Shown: positions 271 through 60,869, numbered from the stretch's first letter. The stretch is 64,000 nt of DNA from Tubulanus polymorphus (GCF_964204645.1 NC_134033.1:2066131-2130130); one strand, 5' to 3'. Notes: generated by a model from the letters alone, not told the origin. Program-made: numbers and translations.

Positions 271-665
271 TGACGATAAAAAAATGTCGGAATGGTAACG
301 ACAGTCTGGAGGGGTACACAGTCCCGGTATAGAAGGCTGCTAATTGATATTATCGTCTATAAGCGGAGATTTTCTGGAATTGAACAGTTTGCCGGAGTGA
401 ACCTCCGAGGGGGAGGAGAATTGTGAACAGAACTCCAAGCAGCCCGAGGCCGGAATTGATAAATTACAGAAATAAAACAGAAAGATTTGATACATCTACT
501 ACACCTACTACATGTCTACAGACCCTGATTAAATTCGTACAAGAATAAATAATAACCTAATTAATATTCAACGTGTGCTAATTACATCGATCAAAAAGTG
601 CTCGGGGCCACAGTCGCTCAAAGGTTGGTTGAACCAGCATGTCAATTTGATCATTTATCAGTTAA

Positions 666-940
666 CTCTTTTAGTGGTAATTAAAACCCGAAAGTGCTGG
701 AGATAATTCAAAATTTCAAAAAATTTCACCCCAGTGCGTTGAATAACAGCATACCACAATAGTGTGTCTACACCGTGGTGCGGTGTATCATTAGTTACTA
801 TTATTTCAATATGTTTGACAGGTGCTGACATTTTTTAATAGAGGTGAAAACTAATAACATCAATACACCACAATGCAGTGTATTAGCAAAGTCCATTATT
901 GATTTATACACCGCACTGCGGTGTAGATGCACTGAAAGGG
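666..940. mobile_element. piggyBac-like MITE copy (TTAA-flanked)
   Basis: TTAA on both sides; right TIR GCACTGAAAGGG; homologous to 3508-3785. Confidence 0.75.
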
Positions 941-3507
941 TTAAGCATCATCCAGTTTCATGAGTTAGGGTTAACTATGAGCTGAATATTCAATGAGTTA
1001 ACTATGATTCACATCCAAGTTAACTCTTAACTCACAACTGTGGAACTGGATACAGGGTAATACTGAAACCCTGCAGCCAATCCGCTAGTTTCACAGTTGT
1101 GAATTTAAATTTGAGTTAACACATGAACTGATTTCAGCCTAACCTCACAACTGTGGAACCAGATTCAGAGTAGCATTATTGATTTGTGAATAGTTAAATC
1201 AAAAATGCATCGTAACCTTGCAATTTCGATTCAACATATTATGCACTACCAACTTTTGAGCGACTGACCCCCGGGCGACTATTTACATGAGCAAATTTGG
1301 CGATAATAATAATAATAATAATAATAAAACTAAATATCATTAAACAAAAACAGTGGTGAAAAATAGTAAATAAATTATTTTGTACAGTATCGATACAAGA
1401 TATGGAAAATTTGTGGCATTTTAAAGAAATTGAAATTCGATGACACTTACGAAGTTTATATTTGAATTCAAATCGATAACTAAAGTTATGACGACGATTA
1501 AATTTCGACAGTTAAGAAATTCAAATTCAAAATAGATGACAGTTAAGAAATTCAAATTCAAAATAGATGACAGTTAAGAAGTTTAGATTTGATATGACAG
1601 TTAAGAGTGCCTGGTGCTAGCTGTGCGAAATGTTGACCCAATACATTTCAGCACCAGCGAAACCTTTTCCGATCTGGAGGTTGACACTTTTACCTCGAAT
1701 TCAATTCAGATTCCGACTCAGCAATATTTGACTTCTAACAGAATTAAACTAATTAATCTTAACTATTTCGTACTCTGGATCCAGTTCCATAGTTTTGAGC
1801 CGAGATTTGGCTGTTCAATCAAAATAAGTTCCATTTTTCAACTAACAACAATTAAACCGTTCAAACTGTTTCTTGACTTTAATCTCAGCTCTAATCAACG
1901 AACACCTTCTAAAAACTAAGGTTTTATCTTCTTCATTACAAATCAAATTTTTTCAATGACTAAAATTAAACCACCAAATTCAATTACTAATAATTAGTTA
2001 ATTAGCACTATTCTAGTTAATTGTCAGCAGCTTTGTTACGTAATTAGGCGTCTTTGTTAATTACATTTTCTCGATGAACTCTTAACGACTGAATTCTCAC
2101 TATATTTACACGCTCATGCACGACCCTGGATAACTTTCCTCGAAGCCCCAGACTAAAACCCCGGGCCCCGGTTTCATAATTACAGACACAGGCTGTGGGT
2201 TTCACGAGACTTAAATCAATTCGATTTTTTTCATCAAATTCACAGAATCGAACGTCTAAATAAAACAAGCTCCGGGAATCATGTCAATCCGGAGACCACG
2301 AGGAAAAATGGCTGCTGCAGGTTTGAAGTTACCAGCTTCCAGCTTCGGCAGGCCCAATCTAGCCAAGTCTGTGTGCGTATACCAACTTAAACCTAAGGTC
2401 ACAGAAATGTTTTCAACCGCCCAAGATTTCTTTGGCTATGGGGATTGATTTTCGAAATAACTAGCTTAAAACTAAAGACCATTTATAACAAGTCTACGCA
2501 TGAATACCGTTTTGACCATAGATAAGTAAATATATACCCAAGGGCAGCTGCTCATAAGTTAGTTACAGTAAACCAGTGGATAGTTGACAGTGACAATTAA
2601 AAGTTCTACGGTATTTATCCGCCGGTTATCTTTAACAAACTTTCGAGCAATGCAGCCCATGACCATCACAACTATAGTTATCATAGCTATCATACATTAG
2701 TTACCTCAGATACAAAAATGTTCACGCAATACTTTTGACGATTTTTTCGTTGTAAAATTAGAAAAAACATTTTCACTTTCTATCACAAACAGCAAGCGAG
2801 CCTTTTATACTATATTTACCAGAAACTGAAAGAGCTTTCGGTATTTGAATCACGGATTTTCAACAAATTGACCGCGACAGTGGCAAACCAGAGCCCCAGT
2901 GGCAAACCAGATGGTCCCACAGTGGCAAATAAGAGAGCCCAACAGTGGCAAACCGGATGGTCCCACAGTGACAGGGATGCCACAGTATAAGACAACCCCG
3001 TAGTTGCAGAGCCCCACGATGGCAGAGAATACCAAAATTGGTGGGTGTTACAATAATGATACACCACAGTGACAGACGCCACCATGCTGACAGACAGATG
3101 GCGCCACACTGGCAGACACCTCTGACAGACGGCAATTCGTTTAAAAATCCATGAATATATTATGTATATTCACTGCTAGTAAGTACACAGCACACAGTTC
3201 AAGATTAATAACATTTCTGAGCAGTCTTTTGACCAAACTCAAACCGAGTCATTTCAACCGGCGACTGCCCGAGCCGTATTCATGTATCATCAATTTCAGA
3301 ACGGACGATAATATACGTCTGCCTGGTTCCATATACAACACTATCTACAATTTACACGTCAATAGAACAGCGCAGCTGAACTACAGAGAGCAGACTGACC
3401 GACCCAGCTTCACAATTACCGGGTTAAATCCTAGTCGAATCATTCGACATAAACCCGAGAGAACTGCGGACGCACCGTCTGGACCAGTTCCACAGTTATG
3501 GGCTTAA

Positions 3508-3785
3508 CCCTTTCAGTGCTGACTAGTTAATACCCTATAGTGCTGGAGATAATTTGAAAATTTTTAAAAATTCCACCCTAGTGTGTTGAATAACAGGAAT
3601 ACCACTATAGTGTCTACACTGCAACGCGGTGTATCGTTAGTTACTAGTATTTCACTATGTCTGACAAGTGCCGCCATTATCAAGAGAGATAATTACTAAT
3701 TACATCAATACACCGCAGTGCGATGTACTAGCAAAATCCATCACTGATTTATACACCGCACTGCGGTGTAGACGCACTGAAAGGG
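3508..3785. mobile_element. piggyBac-like MITE, 278 bp, TIR CCCTTTCAGTGC, TTAA TSD
   Basis: TTAA|CCCTTTCAGTGC ... GCACTGAAAGGG|TTAA. Other copies at 25419-25696, ~27040-27290, 35081-35625 (tandem pair), 39407-39745 (inverted) and 63527-63563 (fragment). Confidence 0.9.
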
Positions 3786-4640
3786 TTAATTAGACTCAAC
3801 AGTTCATTTTCAAATTTTCCTCGACGCAATTCGAACGTGAACTAGTGACCGCTTCCAAAGTTGAGACTTAAGATAAAACCAGTCCAAGCTCTTTTTGGTC
3901 CTATAATATTAGACCTACATCAATTAAGACCAGTCTCTTATCGACTGTGGAGGGACCGTTAGGTCCTACGTTACATATTGTCTTTTCACAAAAAACGACG
4001 AAAAAATTTACAGCCGCGAATGAAATTTACACAAATCTAAAAATTCAACATTTAAATAAACAATGTTATGATATAACCTATAATTACAATAATATTGATA
4101 AATTTAATATTCGATGATAGTGTTTCGCGTACAAAACACTTTCTAACGACGGATTGGCAAGAGAGGAGGGGAAACTAGGTCGAATTTTCGATCTAAACGT
4201 AAATCTAAATATCTAAATTTTCAACGTCAAAAAAAAAACAAACTCGAAAGTATCGTAGTTTTAAATACCGTACAAGCGCACCAAAGATATGACTCTATCG
4301 AAGAAATTTGAGGTAGGGACAAATTTTTTGTTTGCATTTTAAATACATTTCTGCGAATCATACCTTGAACTCTAAAATCTAAATTTACATCAAAGCGTGC
4401 TCATATATATATAAAGCGATTACATATACTGTGATATAAGTATAAAGCGTAGCAAATATATTGGCATTTGACAAAGTTTGACTATCAAAAACTGTTTGAC
4501 TATTTTTATTCACCTGGATAAAAAGGCATTTGACACAGTTCGTTAACGAAAACTTTCGATACAATTGATAAGCAAAGTATTTGATACAATTGGGAACTTT
4601 CAAGGCTACTAGTTTGGCGATCGAGGATTCCATTTATGCA

Positions 4641-48652: not shown

Positions 48653-50648
48653 ATGCGATTTGGTTTATTGAAACTGACCTTGGTGCTCGTCATGAACTTG
48701 CTGGTCCTCGGAATCATCTTATTACGGTAAAAAAAGAAAAAACGTCGGTTCCTTCAATTTGCAATCATCGATTATTCCAGACATTTTTCAGGGCCATATA
48801 TCTATAGGCCAATACCCGAGATTCTGAAAATTTTAAGCGTTTTATAGATGCATTTCTGGCCAACGCTAGTGAATATAACAAAGGCCACCGAACCATTGGT
48901 GTAATCTAAAAAAAGTTTCTTTGACTAAAAATAGTGGAACTCGGGATCTTGCGTGGGTGCGTTCGCAGCCCCTCCACGGGTAAAACGAGAAGAACACATT
49001 ACCCAGACCACATCGAGTTCAAGCAAAAGCAATTTATTCTTTGTATCACACGAATGAATAAAATTTTACTAACACACAAATTAAAAAAGCAAAACGCCCT
49101 AGTCACTAAAAACGAACCAAATCTCTAAAATTTCTACAAAAAAAAATTCTGGAATTTCATAGCTTTTTCACTCTTTCAGATGACACGAAACAAACAATTT
49201 TATAGCCATTTTCACAAAACTTTGAAAATAACAATTGAATTATAACAATTTCCATAACTTTTCCAGGTTTATCGGGAATTTATAACACGAAGAAACCCCA
49301 ACACGTTGACGTACAAGTTCCACAGAGATTTTTGGAAAACGTTCAATAATATAATTGTTCATATGGGTCCAGTTCCACAGTTCTGAGTTAAGATTTGGCT
49401 CTGAGTTAACACATCGAAAATGAACTAACTTTAACTAAGAGTTAACTCTAACTCACAAATGTCGAACTGGGCCATGGTGTAAAATCTTCTAGCAGAAGAC
49501 TGCGTTCAGAAGAATGATTTTCTGTCCTCTTATAAGATTTCTAATGTTAAAGATTTCTTAAAATTATTTTCAGGAGGCGATCCGAGGTGGCACGAGCGAG
49601 AAAACGCGTTTACTTCTTGAAGGTGTACGAAAGCGGTTCCACTACAGTCGGCGGTGTGCTGGCCCGATACGCCGACAAGCAAAACCTGAATTTCATTTTT
49701 CATAAAATGGATCCGTTGACATACGGCACGTTGATAAGCTGGCCCGGAAGTTGGCTGTTACCGGAAGCTGGTCGGAACGGAGGCGTCGATATTCTAACGT
49801 CGCACATCAAATACGACGAGACGAAATTGAAGACGATTTTGCACTCGGACCCGGAGGAAATCTTATCGGTCGCGATCATTGAGAATCCGTGGAGCCAGTT
49901 CCTGTCCGCTTTCGAAACGTTCAAAGTTGCCGCAGAAATGCCCGATATTGGCTCGTCGCCGAACCCGGTTCTCGAGTATCTCTCGAATTTCGAAAAACAT
50001 CGTTCTCGAATAACGGCCGTTGATCGCAGACGACAACATAGACGGGCTGACGGGAAAAGAAATTACGCCGGGCTTCGGAATTTGCTTATCACACAATTCG
50101 GCGGTTCGGCCGACTCGGCGGGATTTCCCCTTGAACGGTCTTATTTCAACCGATTCGTCGAATTGATAAATCGAGAATTTTCCCTAGTTATGATTCTAGA
50201 GTATTTCTACGAATCGTTAGTGTTATTCAGGCGAATCGCAAATTGGCGATTGGAGGACATTTTATTTCAATCGTTCGCAATCAAAAATAGACGACAAAAA
50301 CGCGGCGGCCGCGATCGTCTGTGGCCGGTTGCCGAGCAACAACTTGAAAAACGCGCCAAAACGATTCACGATCAATACAGCGCAGACGATTACGAGTTTT
50401 ATCGTTATTTCAATCGATCGTTTTGGGAGAAAGTTCGCCGAGAAAACGCCGCAGATTTCTACGCAGAGGTCGACTATTTCAGACACGTGAACGAACGGGT
50501 TTTGAAGTATTGCGACGAGCCGGAGAGCGACGGTCCGTTTCTGGTTTCGGCGTCGCCGTGGAACCTCGATTTCGAGTTCACCAAATACAAATGCGTCATG
50601 TTGAACATGGATATGTTCGATCACATGGAATCAAAACGAAAATATTAA
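48653..50648 (+). CDS. Galactose-3-O-sulfotransferase family (GAL3ST/cerebroside sulfotransferase-like) type II membrane protein, 382 aa, with degenerate PAPS motifs
   Basis: Exon 48653-48726 encodes a signal-anchor (MRFGLLKLTLVLVMNLLVLGIILLR; phase-2 donor CG|gtaaaa), joined to 49574-50648. Family motifs: YFLKVYESGSTT, DILTSH, FSLVMILEYFYESLVLFRRIANW, DYEFYRYFNRSFWEK, terminal C...C. Confidence 0.85.
49365..49473. mobile_element. Harbinger-like MITE family B (TIR GGGTCCAGTTCCACAGTT)
   Basis: Copies at 53562-53666, ~24290-24400, ~950-1160, ~37270-37500 and 10895-10993. Confidence 0.7.
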
Positions 50649-56230: not shown

Positions 56231-56422
56231 GCATACATGCCGCGTAAAAAATGAAATGTTGTGAAAAATGTATCTTTTCATCGGTCTTTGTATCATTAAT
56301 GAAATGGGTGCACCTTTACTATCCCTTACACAGCAATTGAGAATATATAAATATGTAACGTATTCTCACTCTCTTACTCAAATGTGGAACTACTTTTTCT
56401 GACATTTTATGACATTGACAAT

Positions 56423-56637
56423 GGGGACAGTGACATCGGGTGACATGGGGGACAGTGACATAGAGTGACATCGGGGACAGTGACATAGGGTGACATCGGG
56501 GACAGTGACATAGAGTGACATCGGGGACAGTGACATAGAGTGACATCGGGGACAGTGACATAGAGTGACATCGGGTGGGACAGTGACATAGAGTGACATC
56601 GGGGACAGTGACATAGAGTGACATCGGGGACAGTGAC
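56423..56637 (+). repeat. 25-bp tandem array GGGGACAGTGACATAGAGTGACATC, ~8.5 copies
   Basis: Direct reading; degenerate reverse-complement copies (TGTCAC) at 60036-60118. Confidence 0.95.
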
Positions 56638-56959
56638 CTCTCTAGGATACATCTCCGGGGATATTTTTCCAGCTCCGCATCCCTCCCCCCAAAATGGTTG
56701 AGTTGCATCCAAGAAAACCATGCAGAAATGTCTAGAAAACAGCCAGCCATATGAGTTTTTAAAAGTGAAAATGTGATAATTATTAATCACTATTAGGACT
56801 CAATTATTTATTCCAATCGAATATATTTACATTGAAAAATTTTTCAAAAGTGACAATGTGATAACTATTAATCGCTATTCAAGTAAGTTTCTTATGGTAT
56901 GAATAAGGTATAATATTATTCACAATGGGGTATAGTATAAATGGGGCCGATAGATGTAA

Positions 56960-58877
56960 TTACAATAGTTCATGCTGGTAATGTTTTGGTAAATGCGTAA
57001 TAAATTCAGGTAAACAATCCTTTGAGAAATTTTCACTGTAATGCTGAATGTCGATTCCAGAATTGAAAATATCGTCATATTCAGGAAGTTGCACGGTGTC
57101 CGGATGCGGTTTCATGAAGAATACTGATCTTCCAAGAATGTAAATTCGGCCGAATCCTCGTTCGGTCAACTGCAGTAATTCGCCTGAAATAAAGTTTCAG
57201 TAGTTAGAAACTGATAGTAAAAGAGGATTATGAGGCTCATCGATTATGGCAGCGTCAATGACGGCCCAAAATAACAGCAAAATGAAGCTATAAAACGTTT
57301 GACTAGTACTAACAATAATAATTACCTTTAACTTGTTCTGCTAGACAGCTTTTCACAACTCTGTGAATGTTGCGTACAGATGTGACGGGTCCTTGTGACG
57401 AAAGCAAAGCCTTCGATATCTTTTGCGGAAATGATGACACGCGAGGCGCGTGTATTGAATCTACAGCATTGTGATGTTCCACTGCCTGTAAATCAAAATG
57501 GAAAAAATAATTTAGTGTAACCGGTAGTTATTATTGTCGTAAATGTTTAATAATTTGTGTGGGCAATGAACTTTTTATTAAGACCCATTGAGCAGTAAAT
57601 TGGTTCTCAGTGATTAGCGCCAATGCATTTTTCGTACGTGATGAAATTAATTTGATTTGGGGAATGCATACCTCGAGAAATATAGCTTTCTGGTGCTGCA
57701 TTGTTCTGAAAAGTGTTTTCGCAGCTTGCATTTGTTGCATTGGAATAATTTCTGAAATGGTGAATCTATTGTCGGATCTCCTTATGGTGTGCATCATCGC
57801 CTCAACGAATATATGCAGTAACGCAGCAAGCCGAAATATGTGCGTCGCATCCTTTGACGATGCCACGTATATATCGCCGTTCTGTTCTTGGTTTTCTTCT
57901 GAAATATGAAAATAAACGTAAAAATGAATGCATAGCCTTACGATTAAAGACCATTGGTAAAACCATGGTTTCAGCAACTTACCAATATTTTCGTGGTATC
58001 TGCGTTGAAGGTAATCGATGTATTCTTTCCTGATTTCATTAAACAAATTCTCACTTTCATCAGATAATGTGTATGTCACCTTATTGTTCAGGTGTACTTC
58101 ATACACAGACTGCAGAATGCTTTTGAACCCGTTTTTCAAGGGGGAGTTCATCACTTCGCGATGCGCTCTAACGTTTTCTTCAGGTTGATGCAATTCGGGT
58201 TTGCATACACAGAATGTAAATCTGTCTATAAAACCGTCCCCACGACACAATTGCACTAGTTCCATTAAAAGTGGTTCGGCCTGAACCATGACGTTCATCG
58301 ACATTGATGTTTTATTGAATCCTCTTTGTCCGTTGGATAAAGTTGAAGTATCTCCCCGACCTCCCCACATTTTGCAAAGCAACGCACGTTCAGTTTCGCC
58401 ATTTTTCTGTTTTATGTTAATAGCTTTGAGGAGTCTACCTCCTTCGTCCGACGTGATAAGTCCATAACCAGAATTTAAAGCCTGGTGTTTCTGTACCCCG
58501 GCTACAGAATAAGTCTCCAAAATGAAGTTATTTCCTGCATTTGCATCGGTATAGTAATCCGAAAACGGTTCGATAATCCGCTCGAAACAATTCGATTTGC
58601 CACATCCAGGATCACCAACTATCATCATGTAGCTATTCAAAGGACTGATGAACCCGGCATCTTTTGTACTGACACGAGTGTTTGGTCCAGCAATCGACGC
58701 AATACACGTTAACAACGTCGGAATTGCAATATCACAGTTGCAATTGTATGCTCTGTCGTATAATTTCAGCAGATCTAGCACATCCGGAGGTAATATTAAA
58801 TCCCATTGGAATTTGATCTTATATGCACTCTGATATAGTTTGAAGATACTACTTTTAGAAAAACGTTTACTAGCCAT
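56960..58877 (-). CDS. DUF3987/YfjI-like, MCM-like AAA+ ATPase/helicase with C-terminal winged-helix-like region, 501 aa, 4 exons
   Basis: Exons 58877-57983, 57898-57672, 57485-57326 and 57183-56960 (1506 nt, GT-AG, no stops). Walker A VGDPGCGKS, Walker B LITSDEG, arginine-finger-like DGFIDRF, RLAALLH helix, C-terminal ELLQLTERGFGRIY. An upstream in-frame ATG exists at 58925. Confidence 0.8.
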
Positions 58878-59450
58878 GGCGTGGAAAGTAAGGTAACTGT
58901 GAACTATTGAACAAATTATGACCATTTTATATGGTCAGTTAGTTATTCAATAATTCATTAACCAATGAAAATGGTTAGGCCTATTTAAGTGCGTCAATGA
59001 AACTTGACTATCAACGTATCGGTAAACAATTGCAGAAACAATGACAAATTAGGGTTTTAGTGCTAGTACTTAATTCGATTTGCTTGGGTCAAGATTCTAA
59101 ACAGGCAACTTTGACAGGAAATAGTCACACCGAAATTAAAGTGGTAATTAGTAATTGAGGTAGGATTTTAAAACTAGTGGTTTTGATAATTACAGGCCCT
59201 GTACTAACGGCTGCAGCCCACTAACAAATGTGTTAATGCATGGTATATTGAATACAAGCAATAAAGAAATCGAAATCAATGCATTGTTCAACGAAGCTGA
59301 ACAAGTACTAGTGGTAATCATATTTCCACATTTGTTTGCGGTTAACCTGTTTACCGTTCATTGTTCCATAATACTTTGTTATCAAAGTTTGGCCAATAGA
59401 AATGAGCCGAAATGAAAGGTTATGAACGGTCGAATTAAAAATTGGCTAAT

Positions 59451-59846
59451 ATGGAGTTTGGCACTAGGCTCATTTTTGGAACTACAAACATGATTTCGCC
59501 AGAAAGTAAAAAATTGAAAAATGATGATAGTTGGACTTGTAGTTATGAGAGAGACGATAAGAAAAAAGTCATCACCTATAAAGAATTAATTGGAACAATC
59601 ATGAATACAAGACGTGGAACTATTGACTGGTTAATGGATCGTAATCTGATTGCAGCTTCACGTCAGTGTCCGGTTTGTAATGATGAAATGAAATTGTCAT
59701 TGGACGTCAGCAAAAAATCTGCGAGTGAAGGATGGCGGTGGAGTTGCCGAAAACGTGTTGATAGTGTGTTGCACCAACGGTTTAAGTCGGTTCGAGGCGA
59801 CAGTTGGTTTTCTAAATCTAACTTAACGTTGTTAATAAAATGTTAA
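59451..59846 (+). CDS. Merlin/IS1595 (ISXO2-like) transposase N-terminal Zn-ribbon only, 131 aa; no DDE domain
   Basis: WLMDRNLIAASRQCPVCNDEMKL...EGWRWSCRK...SVRGDSWFSKSNLTL fits the Merlin N-terminal pattern (W-L...CPxC...GxxWxC...SxRxxSWFxxSxL). The ORF stops before the catalytic domain. Confidence 0.75.
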   Translation: MEFGTRLIFGTTNMISPESKKLKNDDSWTCSYERDDKKKVITYKELIGTIMNTRRGTIDWLMDRNLIAASRQCPVCNDEMKLSLDVSKKSASEGWRWSCRKRVDSVLHQRFKSVRGDSWFSKSNLTLLIKC

Positions 59847-60869
59847 TATCTGTTTCTGTTTAATCAAACGAATAATTGTAAATGCAAACATGGACTTTTT
59901 ATAGAACTGGTGATTTGTAAATAAAATTTGGGCTTTTAATAGAAATATTGCAACACGTATTTCTTTTCATTTTTTGGAGTTCATAACAATGAATTAAATC
60001 TAATTCCATTAAACATCGCCATATCAGTGGTGTAGTGTCATTCATTGTCACTGTCACCAATGTCACCTCTTGATTCTATGTGTGTTTCACCCTCTTTGTC
60101 ACAGTCACTGATGCCCCCATAATTGTTCTGGCGTATTGATATACGGCGAATTACATGACTTCTCACTTATACATAAAAATAGTAGACTTGCACAGCTGTG
60201 TAAGGTATAGTAAAGCCAAGCCATGAAATGTGGTGACATTTAACCCGAAGTTTAAAAGGTTCAACATCGATTGACAATTCGATCTTAATTTAGAGGCGAG
60301 TTTTAAGATCAGAACCAACCAAAATAGGGGACTAGTAAGTAGTGGGTAAGTTTATTTAGTTCCCCAATCTTCAAATTACTATATTACTAACTATCTGTAT
60401 AATCTGATCATATATATCATCATTATCAATTGAATTACTATTATTATATACATATATATTGCTATAGTCCCCTATTCTTGAATCGCACCCAGGATTCAAA
60501 CCCGCTTGTCATTCCATCCCTGATCTGCTGATGATGTATCGTTTTAAAAAGCCATGATGAGTTGAGTTGAGAGTTGTTTCATAAACCTTCTTAATGCCAT
60601 GGCAAAGGACCACAGCCTTGTGTTTTCACCATAGCCGCATAAAGGCTACAATCAATGTAGTAAGCAGCACGACTCAAACCCACTCGAACCCAAACAAAAC
60701 ACAATATCAAAATGTTTTTTTTGCCGAAGTAGCCTTCATACTGTAGTTTATTTTCCGCCCTCTGCCTCTAATTAGGATATAACGCTAATTTCGTGTTGTT
60801 AATTGTAATGATTGATTGGATGTTAATAAATGTTCTTTTTTTAGACATTGTGTAGTTGTTTGATAAACG

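What the first reader, a model, noticed from the sequence alone, without database searches (positions are those of the whole stretch)
56314..60215. IR-bounded animal mobile element built around a spliced DUF3987 (MCM-like) helicase rather than a catalytic transposase
Seen: a 21-bp inverted repeat (20/21), mirror-image GTGACA arrays ~80-90 bp inside each end, an intact 501-aa four-exon P-loop ATPase gene and a divergent 131-aa Zn-ribbon ORF. There is no DDE, tyrosine-recombinase, HUH or RT domain and no TSD. Established: DUF3987/YfjI proteins are typical of bacterial prophage and integrative elements, often next to primase modules, and Merlin is the eukaryotic IS1595/IS1016 relative. Inference: this is a non-autonomous Merlin-related element, or an unclassified element family, whose preserved cargo is a replicative-type helicase. 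I know of no described eukaryotic DNA-transposon family with this gene pair.
Basis: partly seen in the sequence, partly recalled or inferred. Interest (0 to 1): 0.88.

Follow-up and report, generated by a model that had tools for sequence, protein, structure and literature searches.

The report
Merlin transposon carrying MCM-like helicase
This is a crippled copy of a recently active "Merlin" jumping gene of the ribbon worm Tubulanus polymorphus, from a lineage that carries a second conserved gene for an MCM-like DNA helicase beside the usual transposase, a pairing I also found in a mussel and a jellyfish but in no paper.

Summary
The element runs from 56307 to 60222, 7 bp further out at each end than reported. 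It has 28-bp inverted ends that start with GG, and an 8-bp target-site duplication (ATGAAATG).

Three more copies in the genome are about 99.7% identical, each with its own 8-bp duplication. They carry 798 bp that this copy has lost. With that stretch, the "131-aa Zn-ribbon ORF" becomes a 349-aa IS1595/Merlin DDE transposase. The window copy is therefore a non-autonomous deletion derivative of an autonomous Merlin transposon.

The four-exon, 501-aa DUF3987 gene is intact. It has Walker A, Walker B and arginine-finger residues. Its predicted structure (pLDDT 89) matches MCM helicases (Z 15) and ends in a winged helix.

The helicase–transposase pair recurs widely:
- In five deeply diverged families of this genome, 17 of 37 DUF3987 loci lie within 3 kb of a Merlin transposase (0.04 expected by chance).
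- Mytilus edulis has a 7.2-kb element with both genes inside GG ends and 8-bp duplications.
- Clytia hemisphaerica has the two genes adjacent.

The full-text library held no paper that describes this pairing. The scan had already noted the same pairing on other DNA of this genome (s1-496565, s1-496681). What the helicase does is inferred, not shown.

The parts
56299..56306 (.). Left copy of the 8-bp target-site duplication (ATGAAATG).
   Evidence: identical 8-mers directly flank the sequence shared by all four copies. The three sister copies have different 8-bp duplications (CCAGTACT, GCTCTGCT, ACTGCAGC).
56307..56334 (+). Left terminal inverted repeat, 28 bp, starting with GG.
   Evidence: the termini are shared by the four copies. 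The outer 7 bases match the right end only at GG.
56416..56637 (+). Left subterminal array: 8.8 copies of a 25-nt unit, holding 16 GTGACA all on one strand. It is a candidate protein-binding site array.
   Evidence: GTGACA occurs 16 times in the left 450 bp, against 0.2 per 450 bp in the element interior.
56960..57183 (-). DUF3987 helicase gene, exon 4 with its stop codon. It encodes part of the C-terminal winged-helix region and the tail.
   Evidence: acceptor AG at 57185-57184, read from the sequence; colinear with the intron-less homologue P0006; residues about 388-475 align to winged-helix domains, Z 6-7.
57326..57485 (-). DUF3987 helicase gene, exon 3.
   Evidence: GT donor at 57325, AG acceptor before 57485.
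57672..57898 (-). DUF3987 helicase gene, exon 2.
   Evidence: (weak match to the end of PF13148, profile positions 313-359).
57983..58877 (-). DUF3987 helicase gene, exon 1 (298 codons plus 1 nt). It encodes the N-terminal domain and the AAA+ core, with Walker A K94, Walker B E145 and the DRF arginine R219.
   Evidence: PF13148, E 9e-25, 88 bits against a 27-bit cut-off; conserved residues; MCM fold.
58878..59450 (.). Spacer of about 570 bp between the two divergently oriented genes. It is presumably a bidirectional promoter region (inferred, not tested).
   Evidence: Gene positions. The same divergent layout occurs in families F2 and F3 and in three Mytilus copies.
59451..59846 (+). Truncated Merlin transposase ORF. 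The first 129 or so residues carry the conserved CCCH zinc motif, followed by a few junk codons. All three DDE motifs are missing.
   Evidence: matches residues 1-131 of the 349-aa transposase at 97%; C76 and C79 nearly invariant, C102 and H111 invariant.
59827..59828 (.). Junction of the 798-bp internal deletion, with 1 nt of microhomology. The deletion removed the catalytic domain of the transposase.
   Evidence: the sister copies on C7, C6 and C4 carry 798 extra bases here.
60036..60110 (-). Right subterminal GTGACA-type repeats, 4 copies in mirror orientation to the left array.
   Evidence: inverted pairs I1-I7, I10, I12.
60195..60222 (-). Right terminal inverted repeat, 28 bp, ending in CC.
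60223..60230 (.). Right copy of the 8-bp target-site duplication (ATGAAATG).
   Evidence: The flanks are single-copy in the genome.

Best explanation
Window 56307-60222 is a non-autonomous, internally deleted copy of a recently active 4.7-kb two-gene DNA transposon of the Merlin (IS1595/IS1016-like) superfamily in the nemertean Tubulanus polymorphus.

Shown:
- The family moves by DDE transposition that makes 8-bp target duplications.
- Full-length sister copies encode the zinc-ribbon plus DDE transposase.
- This copy has lost the catalytic domain, so it can move only with transposase supplied in trans.
- Its second gene encodes an intact, spliced DUF3987 protein. This is an AAA+ ATPase of the MCM-like (superfamily 6) helicase clade with a C-terminal winged helix.
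- That gene is a conserved component of a set of Merlin lineages in at least three animal phyla.

Inferred:
- The helicase is an element-encoded accessory motor kept by selection on the element.
- The most likely mechanism is that it oligomerises on element DNA and unwinds it. Loading could go through the winged helix and the oriented subterminal repeat arrays, or through the transposition complex.
- Host polymerases could then copy the element or repair the donor gap. That would turn cut-and-paste moves into net copy gain. It would be the same logic as the MCM-like helicases of recombinase-moved bacterial islands such as SCCmec Cch and SaPI Rep.

My odds: identity as a deleted two-gene Merlin copy about 0.95. 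The helicase is a selected element function about 0.8. The specific replication or repair-synthesis mechanism about 0.4.
For: Identity:
- Four copies are at least 99.7% identical at unrelated loci, with the same GG-initiated 28-bp ends and four different 8-bp TSDs.
- The 349-aa transposase matches PF12762 at E 2.4e-19 and NCBIfam IS1595 above its cut-off, and the DESKF, SDCW and NLIE motifs are visible.
- The 798-bp deletion in the window copy is mapped.
- The Merlin definition comes from PMC8101967.

Helicase:
- PF13148 scores 88-99 bits and PHROG 2373 'DNA helicase' matches at E 7e-20.
- K94, E145, Q199, G215 and R219 are conserved across 39 homologues.
- The AlphaFold model has pLDDT 89 and pTM 0.75.
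- The top 50 Foldseek hits are all MCM.
- VIA-align gives MCM Z 15.1 and SCCmec Cch Z 9.9, but MuB and TnsC only Z about 6. Residues 388-475 align to winged-helix domains.
- DUF3987 is classed as an SF6, MCM-related helicase family with a C-terminal wHTH (PMC4889955).
- A PriCT-DUF3987 protein is an experimentally shown 5'-3' helicase (PMC11724360).

Linkage:
- 17 of 37 DUF3987 loci lie within 3 kb of a Merlin transposase locus, against 0.04 expected.
- Five deep families (30-50% amino-acid identity) carry both genes.
- In families F2 and F4 both genes lie inside GG TIRs with 8-bp TSDs.
- In Mytilus edulis, three copies carry both genes. Two of them (L060, L059) show both GG TIR ends with 8-bp TSDs (GGAATCAC, AGGGAGGT).
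- In Clytia hemisphaerica the two genes are adjacent.

Selection:
- Exon-1 frames are intact in several deep lineages.
- dN/dS is 0.25 against the 82%-identical C5 subfamily.
- All four copies of the window's family keep the helicase intact, while two have broken transposases.
Against:
- The element has no primase or polymerase partner, unlike the prokaryotic DUF3987 systems.
- Subterminal repeat arrays are common transposase-binding sites in many DNA transposons. Family F2 lacks clear arrays, so the arrays do not point specifically to helicase loading.
- 8-bp TSDs and an internal-deletion derivative are what ordinary cut-and-paste with gap repair gives, without any special replication.
- Most Merlin transposases have no DUF3987 neighbour (1,972 transposase relatives against 272 helicase relatives). 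Single-gene Merlins coexist in this genome. The helicase is therefore dispensable for Merlin transposition as such.
- The dN/dS estimate is a simple per-exon Nei-Gojobori count against a now-dead copy.
- The Mantel correlation (r 0.86) is driven partly by near-identical copies.
Confidence: 0.55

Rival explanations
1. The DUF3987 protein is not a replication or repair helicase. It is a transposition regulator or target-DNA selector, a eukaryotic counterpart of the AAA+ partners of bacterial DDE transposases (MuB, TnsC, IstB, TniB). It would bind target or donor DNA in an ATP-dependent way and recruit or activate the Merlin transposase.
For: A DDE transposase paired with an AAA+ ATPase has arisen repeatedly in bacteria (general knowledge; Arias-Palomo and Berger 2015 is cited in PMC10045372). 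The two genes stay tightly linked in variable orientations. No primase or polymerase partner is present. MuB and TnsC do appear among the structural matches (Z about 6).
Against: The fold match to MuB and TnsC (Z 5.9-6.2 over about 150 residues) is far weaker than to MCM (Z 15 over 250-280 residues) and to SCCmec Cch (Z 9.9). The only characterised DUF3987 protein is a true 5'-3' helicase. A beta-hairpin before the sensor-1 strand (model residues 174-189) is typical of translocating MCM-clade motors; this last point is my reading of the model. The transposase-helicase interaction could not be tested.
Confidence: 0.2
2. The helicase gene is passive cargo, or serves something other than transposition. 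It could be a captured gene that hitch-hikes, a counter-silencing or host-interaction factor, or a gene on its way to host domestication.
For: About half of the DUF3987 loci have no transposase within 16 kb. The Nematostella and Patiria homologues sit in host-gene introns with no detectable transposase nearby. The C2 element combines a transposase 97% identical to the window family's with a very different DUF3987 remnant, so the two modules can be exchanged.
Against: Passive cargo should not stay intact and linked across five families at 30-50% identity and across three phyla. It should also not show dN/dS of 0.25. Multi-copy location inside TIRs and TSDs excludes a host gene at this locus. 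Lone loci are expected from decayed or deleted copies such as this one.
Confidence: 0.12
3. One reading: this is an unclassified animal element family that has no catalytic transposase and is organised around the helicase.
For: Within the window copy alone, no DDE, HUH, tyrosine-recombinase or RT domain is found.
Against: Sister copies are 99.7% identical and carry a complete DDE_Tnp_IS1595 transposase exactly where this copy has a 798-bp deletion. GG ends and 8-bp TSDs fit Merlin.
Confidence: 0.02

Closest known systems
Merlin superfamily of eukaryotic DNA transposons, related to bacterial IS1016/IS1595 (Feschotte 2004; survey in PMC8101967).
   Same: The transposase has a DDE_Tnp_IS1595 catalytic domain behind an N-terminal zinc motif. 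The TIRs begin with 5'-GG. The TSDs are 8 bp. Internally deleted non-autonomous derivatives exist.
   Different: Described Merlins and IS1595 elements are said to carry a single transposase gene (PMC8101967). Examples in this genome are 1.8-2.1 kb. This lineage is 4.7-7.2 kb and carries a second, spliced gene for an MCM-like helicase, plus oriented subterminal repeat arrays in several families.
DUF3987 (PF13148) SF6 helicases of phages and integrative elements, such as the PriCT-DUF3987 helicase AgaPH (PMC11724360) and phage SF6 helicases (PMC4889955).
   Same: The Pfam domain, the Walker A and B motifs, the MCM-related AAA+ core and the C-terminal winged helix.
   Different: Those proteins are prokaryotic or phage, intron-less, and fused to or next to AEP or DnaG primases. 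This one is in animal genomes, has three spliceosomal introns, has no primase partner, and sits next to a DDE transposase. PMC4889955 noted that SF6 helicases were not found in eukaryotic viruses.
MCM-like self-loading helicases of recombinase-moved bacterial islands: SCCmec Cch and SaPI Rep (PMC7581432, PMC9371898; PDB 5dgk, 7ola, 8tch).
   Same: A mobile element that moves by a recombinase or transposase and also encodes an MCM-clade helicase. The helicase is thought to replicate the element after excision. Structural similarity is Z 9.9 to Cch.
   Different: A different Pfam family (DUF927 or Cch against DUF3987), a different recombinase class (serine or tyrosine against DDE), and bacterial hosts. 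Replication of the Merlin element has not been shown.
AcademH, the lineage of Academ DDE transposons that encodes a helicase (Kojima 2020, cited in PMC10045372).
   Same: It is a precedent for a eukaryotic DDE cut-and-paste superfamily in which one lineage carries a helicase.
   Different: I could not read that paper, so this comparison rests on the citing text and on memory.
Bacterial DDE transposase plus AAA+ partner systems: Mu MuA/MuB, Tn7 TnsB/TnsC, IS21 IstA/IstB.
   Same: The two-gene logic of a DDE transposase with a linked AAA+ ATPase.
   Different: The AAA+ partner belongs to a different clade (Z about 6 against Z 15 for MCM). The transposase family also differs. Those ATPases are DNA-binding switches, not helicases.

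Membership tests
Merlin superfamily (IS1595/IS1016-like DNA transposons) | The transposase has the DDE_Tnp_IS1595 catalytic domain. | tested here: met
   The full-length sister copy (L002:4629-5675) matches PF12762 at E 2.4e-19 (70 bits against a 27-bit cut-off) and NF033547 at 85 bits against 75. The window copy keeps only residues 1 to about 129, because of the 798-bp deletion.
Merlin superfamily (IS1595/IS1016-like DNA transposons) | Terminal inverted repeats with a conserved terminal 5'-GG (PMC8101967). | tested here: met
   The ends begin GGTGCAC... and GGCTTGG... in all four copies. Families F2 and F4 and the Mytilus element also start with GG.
Merlin superfamily (IS1595/IS1016-like DNA transposons) | Target-site duplications of 8 or 9 bp. 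| tested here: met
   All four copies of the window's family have 8-bp TSDs, each different. So do F2 (CTTGTTGA), F4 (GTTATTTC) and two Mytilus copies.
Merlin superfamily (IS1595/IS1016-like DNA transposons) | A match to a catalogued Repbase or Dfam Merlin family. | not testable with these tools
   No Repbase or Dfam library is on hand. Literature searches for Merlin with DUF3987, helicase or ATPase found nothing.
DUF3987 / superfamily-6 (MCM-related) helicases | A PF13148 match above the gathering score. | tested here: met
   Exon 1 alone scores 88 bits. The 501-aa product of the sister copy scores 99 bits against a 27-bit cut-off.
DUF3987 / superfamily-6 (MCM-related) helicases | Intact Walker A lysine, Walker B acidic residue and arginine finger. 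| tested here: met
   In the 39-sequence alignment, R219 (DRF motif), Q199 and G215 are invariant, and K94 (GCGKS) and E145 (SDEG) are at least 90% conserved. Calling R219 the arginine finger is by analogy to the MCM SRFD motif and is an inference.
DUF3987 / superfamily-6 (MCM-related) helicases | An MCM-like AAA+ fold. | tested here: met
   The model has pLDDT 89. The top 50 Foldseek hits are all MCM, at E 6e-7 to 4e-5. VIA-align gives Z 15.1 to M. kandleri MCM, with 252 residues aligned at rmsd 4.3.
DUF3987 / superfamily-6 (MCM-related) helicases | [quoted passage not shown] | tested here: met
   Model residues about 388-475 align to winged-helix domains: SelB Z 7.3 at rmsd 2.1, plus Fur, AntR and SarA-type domains at Z 6-7. 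These Z values are modest, as expected for a small domain.
DUF3987 / superfamily-6 (MCM-related) helicases | ATP-dependent DNA unwinding and an oligomeric ring. | not testable with these tools
   This is known only for a bacterial PriCT-DUF3987 protein (PMC11724360).
DUF3987 / superfamily-6 (MCM-related) helicases | An associated primase (AEP or DnaG), fused or adjacent, as is usual in prokaryotic members. | tested here: not met
   No primase domain was found in the 501-aa product. No other ORF of 50 aa or more was found that could hold one. This association is typical of the family, not defining.
Transposition AAA+ regulators (MuB, TnsC, IstB) | Closest structural kinship to these ATPases. 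| tested here: not met
   MuB Z 6.2 and TnsC Z 6.0 and 5.9, against MCM Z 13-15. No Pfam match to the IstB, TniB or MuB families.
Helitron, HUH or other non-DDE element classes | A Rep/HUH, tyrosine-recombinase or RT domain. | tested here: not met
   Pfam finds only PF13148 and PF12762 in the element's genes.

The most novel reading that the evidence does not exclude
A clade of animal Merlin transposons would be transposon-replicon hybrids. Their MCM-like helicase, of a family otherwise confined to phages and bacterial and archaeal integrative elements, would load at iteron-like subterminal arrays. It would then drive DNA synthesis of the excised or transposing element. This would be a replication-assisted way of spreading not known for any eukaryotic DDE cut-and-paste superfamily. 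It would also be a trace of a two-gene ancestor, or of gene transfer, from the prokaryotic mobilome.
Probability: 0.3. Interest if true: 0.85.

Novelty: new variant of a known kind. Interest (0 to 1): 0.65.

Why it matters
Merlin is treated as a simple one-gene cut-and-paste superfamily. Here a lineage conserved across phyla pairs its DDE transposase with an MCM-like (SF6) helicase of a family otherwise known from phages and prokaryotic islands.

Three things would follow:
- It would add a second example, beside AcademH, of helicase-assisted DDE transposition in eukaryotes.
- It would give a testable model for how a cut-and-paste element might gain copies through replication or repair synthesis.
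- It would extend the DUF3987 family into animals. PMC4889955 remarked that SF6 helicases are absent from eukaryotic viruses.

The Tubulanus family is young: four copies are about 99.7% identical, and two of them have both genes intact. Natural proteins and natural ends are therefore available for biochemistry.

On the practical side, annotators should know that 'uncharacterized protein' or 'RAD54' models in Tubulanus and Mytilus are transposon genes.

Tried and rejected
I did not use read laying and tried no other route to reads. Expression and splicing are therefore not shown directly.
- Transposase-helicase contact: complex prediction was not folded for policy reasons. This gives no evidence either way.
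They remain unexamined.
- Empty site or other haplotype: both flanks are single-copy in the assembly, so no empty site was available.
- PDB by sequence: only marginal hits, the best being HerA at E 0.003. It was not informative, so fold search was used instead.
- Pfam did not detect the zinc-ribbon family in the 131-aa ORF. The CCCH motif is inferred from alignment A2.
- The ORFs that neighbour helicase-less Merlin transposases (L053, L054) have no DUF3987.
- Single origin of the helicase-bearing Merlins: a 13-row transposase tree needs 2 changes of the label, but strongly supported branches force only 1. The question is unresolved. Only loci already fetched were included, and all other transposase loci were left out.
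- Joined-exon searches of the window copy were not made. The window exons were searched one by one by reference. For whole-protein work I used the stored database protein P0001, the product of a sister copy, which differs from the window copy by one residue in exon 1.
- Whether the element lies at an RB1 locus was not checked. The only nearby ORF I tested is a galactose-3-O-sulfotransferase.

Full report
**What is in the sequence**

So is the left 25-nt tandem array at 56416-56637, with 8.8 copies. A weaker mirror-image set of GTGACA motifs lies at 60036-60110.

On the minus strand I rebuilt the gene from GT-AG sites. The exons are 57983-58877, 57672-57898, 57326-57485 and 56960-57183.
- I searched them one at a time by reference. 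Exon 1 matches PF13148 (DUF3987) at E 9e-25, and exon 2 weakly matches the end of the same profile.
- The protein search returned a 501-aa RefSeq model, 'uncharacterized protein LOC141909242 [Tubulanus polymorphus]' (P0001). This names the organism, a nemertean. P0001 is the product of a sister copy and differs by one residue in exon 1.
- P0001 aligns without breaks across all three exon junctions to an intron-less 515-aa homologue from a metagenome contig. This supports the splice model independently of the annotation.

A DNA search of the window's own genome (268 Mb, 77 contigs) found three more copies, on contigs C7, C6 and C4, that are almost identical. Each has about 800 extra bases at one internal point.

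Aligning the four copies gave these results:
- The ends are 28-bp imperfect inverted repeats that begin with GG.
- Each copy is flanked by its own perfect 8-bp direct duplication: ATGAAATG in the window (56299-56306 and 60223-60230), and CCAGTACT, GCTCTGCT and ACTGCAGC elsewhere.
- Only about ten substitutions separate the four copies.

The window flanks are single-copy.

**The 'Zn-ribbon ORF' is a decapitated transposase**

In the full-length copies (4,714-4,867 bp) the ORF that starts at window 59442/59451 continues to 349 aa.
- It matches PF12762 DDE_Tnp_IS1595 at E 2.4e-19 and the NCBIfam IS1595 transposase model above its cut-off.
- The three catalytic motifs are visible. The CCCH zinc motif is conserved: two positions are invariant and two nearly so across 30 relatives.
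- The window copy has a clean 798-bp deletion at 59827/59828, with 1 nt of microhomology. The deletion removes the whole catalytic domain.
- The C6 copy has a 7-bp frameshifting deletion in the transposase and a 160-bp duplication at its right end. The C7 and C4 copies have both genes open.

GG termini, 8-bp TSDs and this transposase domain are the published definition of Merlin (PMC8101967). The element is therefore a non-autonomous deletion derivative of an autonomous Merlin transposon.

**What the second gene encodes**

Homologues are few: 272 at E below 0.001 among 1.84 billion representatives. I aligned 39 of them.
- R219 (in a DRF motif), Q199 and G215 are invariant. K94 (Walker A) and E145 (Walker B) are at least 90% conserved.
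- With this alignment, AlphaFold2 gave a confident model (pLDDT 89, pTM 0.75).
- The 50 best Foldseek matches in the PDB are all MCM subunits.
- An independent aligner gave these scores:

| Structure | Z |
|---|---|
| Archaeal and eukaryotic MCM (250-280 residues aligned) | 13-15 |
| SCCmec helicase Cch | 9.9 |
| SaPI primase-helicase and Rep | 7-8 |
| Transposition ATPases MuB and TnsC | about 6 |

- Residues about 388-475 align to winged-helix DNA-binding domains.
- PHROGs calls the family 'DNA helicase' (E 7e-20).

The literature agrees. DUF3987 proteins were classed as superfamily-6 helicases distantly related to MCM, with a C-terminal wHTH. They are usually next to primases in phages and were noted as absent from eukaryotic viruses (PMC4889955). 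A PriCT-DUF3987 protein was shown to be an oligomeric, Walker-dependent 5'-3' helicase (PMC11724360).

**The gene pair is a conserved feature of a set of Merlin lineages**

Within this genome:
- Protein and Pfam searches gave 37 DUF3987 loci and 51 Merlin transposase loci.
- 17 DUF3987 loci lie within 3 kb of a transposase locus, where about 0.04 would be expected by chance.
- The paired loci fall into five families that share only 30-50% amino-acid identity. Gene orientation is divergent in three families and convergent in two.
- For family F2, the two genes lie inside a 4,821-bp element with 25-nt GG repeats and the TSD CTTGTTGA.
- For family F4, they lie inside a 5.5-kb element with 32-nt GG repeats, the TSD GTTATTTC and mirror-image subterminal arrays of a CCGACA unit.

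In other phyla:
- Named homologues of the helicase come from Mytilus, Nematostella, Patiria and Clytia.
- In Mytilus edulis, three copies have a DDE_Tnp_IS1595 gene placed divergently next to the DUF3987 gene.
- Aligning the Mytilus copies defines a 7.2-kb element with GG repeats. Its 8-bp TSDs are GGAATCAC and AGGGAGGT, and it has mirror-image GACAGGTC arrays.
- In Clytia hemisphaerica a 494-aa DUF3987 gene sits directly upstream of a Merlin transposase gene.

Limits on this picture:
- Most Merlin transposases have no such neighbour.
- Classical 1.8-2.1-kb single-gene Merlins with long perfect TIRs coexist in this genome.
- A small transposase tree places helicase-bearing elements in two well-supported groups, with helicase-less ones interspersed. 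A single origin is neither shown nor excluded (13 rows, only loci already fetched).
- One element on C2 joins a transposase 97% identical to the window family's to a very different DUF3987 remnant, so the modules can be exchanged.

**Selection**

- Several deep lineages keep open exon-1 frames.
- Against the 82%-identical C5 subfamily, a per-exon Nei-Gojobori count gives dN/dS of 0.25. Against a truncated dead copy it gives 0.89. The method is rough.
- All four copies of the window family keep the helicase intact, although two have lost the transposase.

**How it most likely works**

Shown: DDE transposition with 8-bp duplication; a trans-dependent deleted copy; an intact MCM-clade AAA+ protein with a winged helix, linked to the transposase over long evolutionary time.

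Inferred: the helicase is an accessory function of the element. I favour a role in unwinding element DNA so that host enzymes can copy it or repair the donor site. This is analogous to the MCM-like helicases of SCCmec and SaPI islands. My reasons are that the fold and the only characterised relative are true helicases, and that the match to MuB and TnsC is weak.

The main rival is a MuB/TnsC/IstB-like regulator of target choice. A passenger role is less likely, given the depth of the linkage.

The subterminal arrays could be loading sites. They could equally be ordinary transposase-binding sites, and family F2 lacks them.

**Novelty**

- No paper in the library holds both Merlin and DUF3987.
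- All 13 papers that mention DUF3987 concern prokaryotes or phages.
- Searches that combined Merlin, IS1595 or transposon with helicase, ATPase or SF6 found nothing relevant.
- AcademH is a precedent for a helicase in another DDE superfamily (cited in PMC10045372). I could not read the paper itself.
- Repbase and Dfam could not be consulted.
- The scan had already noted two-gene Merlin elements with a DUF3987 helicase on other DNA of this genome (s1-496565, s1-496681). I saw those notes only after reaching the same reading, and they are not independent evidence.

**Not done**

- Complex prediction: not folded.

Noticed in passing
window 60296-60489: A MITE-like element of about 195 bp lies 74 bp to the right of the main element. 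Its right end is nearly identical to the terminal repeat of the diverged two-gene Merlin family F2 (L032). Its left end is a degraded version of the same repeat. I saw no clear TSD.
   Followed up: partly
L046 (G000:C2:12129001-12135000), about 590-4441: This element has an intact 349-aa transposase that is 97% identical to the window family's. Upstream, in divergent orientation, it carries a very different and fragmented DUF3987 gene. Two fragments match PF13148 at E about 1e-5, with a GTNKS Walker A motif. This suggests that related elements exchange modules.
   Followed up: partly
L040:2865-4657 and L041:3086-5162 (G000 C3 and C11): These are classical single-gene Merlin elements of 1.8-2.1 kb, with perfect or near-perfect TIRs of 102 and 246 nt and intact transposases of 329-330 aa. 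One-gene and two-gene Merlins therefore coexist in this genome.
   Followed up: partly
G000 C2:16482670, C2:16506106, C3:16179092, C10:8767171, C2:18033967, C4:17716189, C8:175486: These are multi-copy DUF3987-like loci with no Merlin transposase within 16 kb. One lies in a 779-aa open frame. They could be deleted derivatives or a different carrier element.
   Followed up: no
L003 / L012 (G000:C6, right end of the copy): The C6 copy has a 160-bp duplication at its right end that creates a second, internal TIR-like sequence. It also has a 7-bp frameshifting deletion in the transposase.
   Followed up: partly
window 59451-59846: The truncated transposase ORF keeps the conserved CCCH zinc motif but has no catalytic domain. 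If expressed, it would be a product with DNA-binding capacity only, and could compete with full-length transposase. This is speculation and was not tested.
   Followed up: no
L036:6312-7256 (G000:C10): Family F4 elements contain a large internal tandem array, with a period of about 50 bp spanning about 1 kb, in addition to their subterminal CCGACA arrays.
   Followed up: no
L008 and L009 (G000:C49:23342-27073 and C12:6858524-6862255): Contig C49 gives hits identical to a stretch of C12. It is probably a haplotig or a duplicated contig in the assembly.
   Followed up: no
window 49587-50645: A 353-aa ORF on the plus strand matches galactose-3-O-sulfotransferase (PF06990, E 3e-32).
   Followed up: no
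P0007, P0157 and P0164 (Mytilus edulis): The helicase genes of these transposons are annotated as 'RAD54' or 'RAD54L' in Mytilus edulis records. This looks like a misannotation.
   Followed up: no
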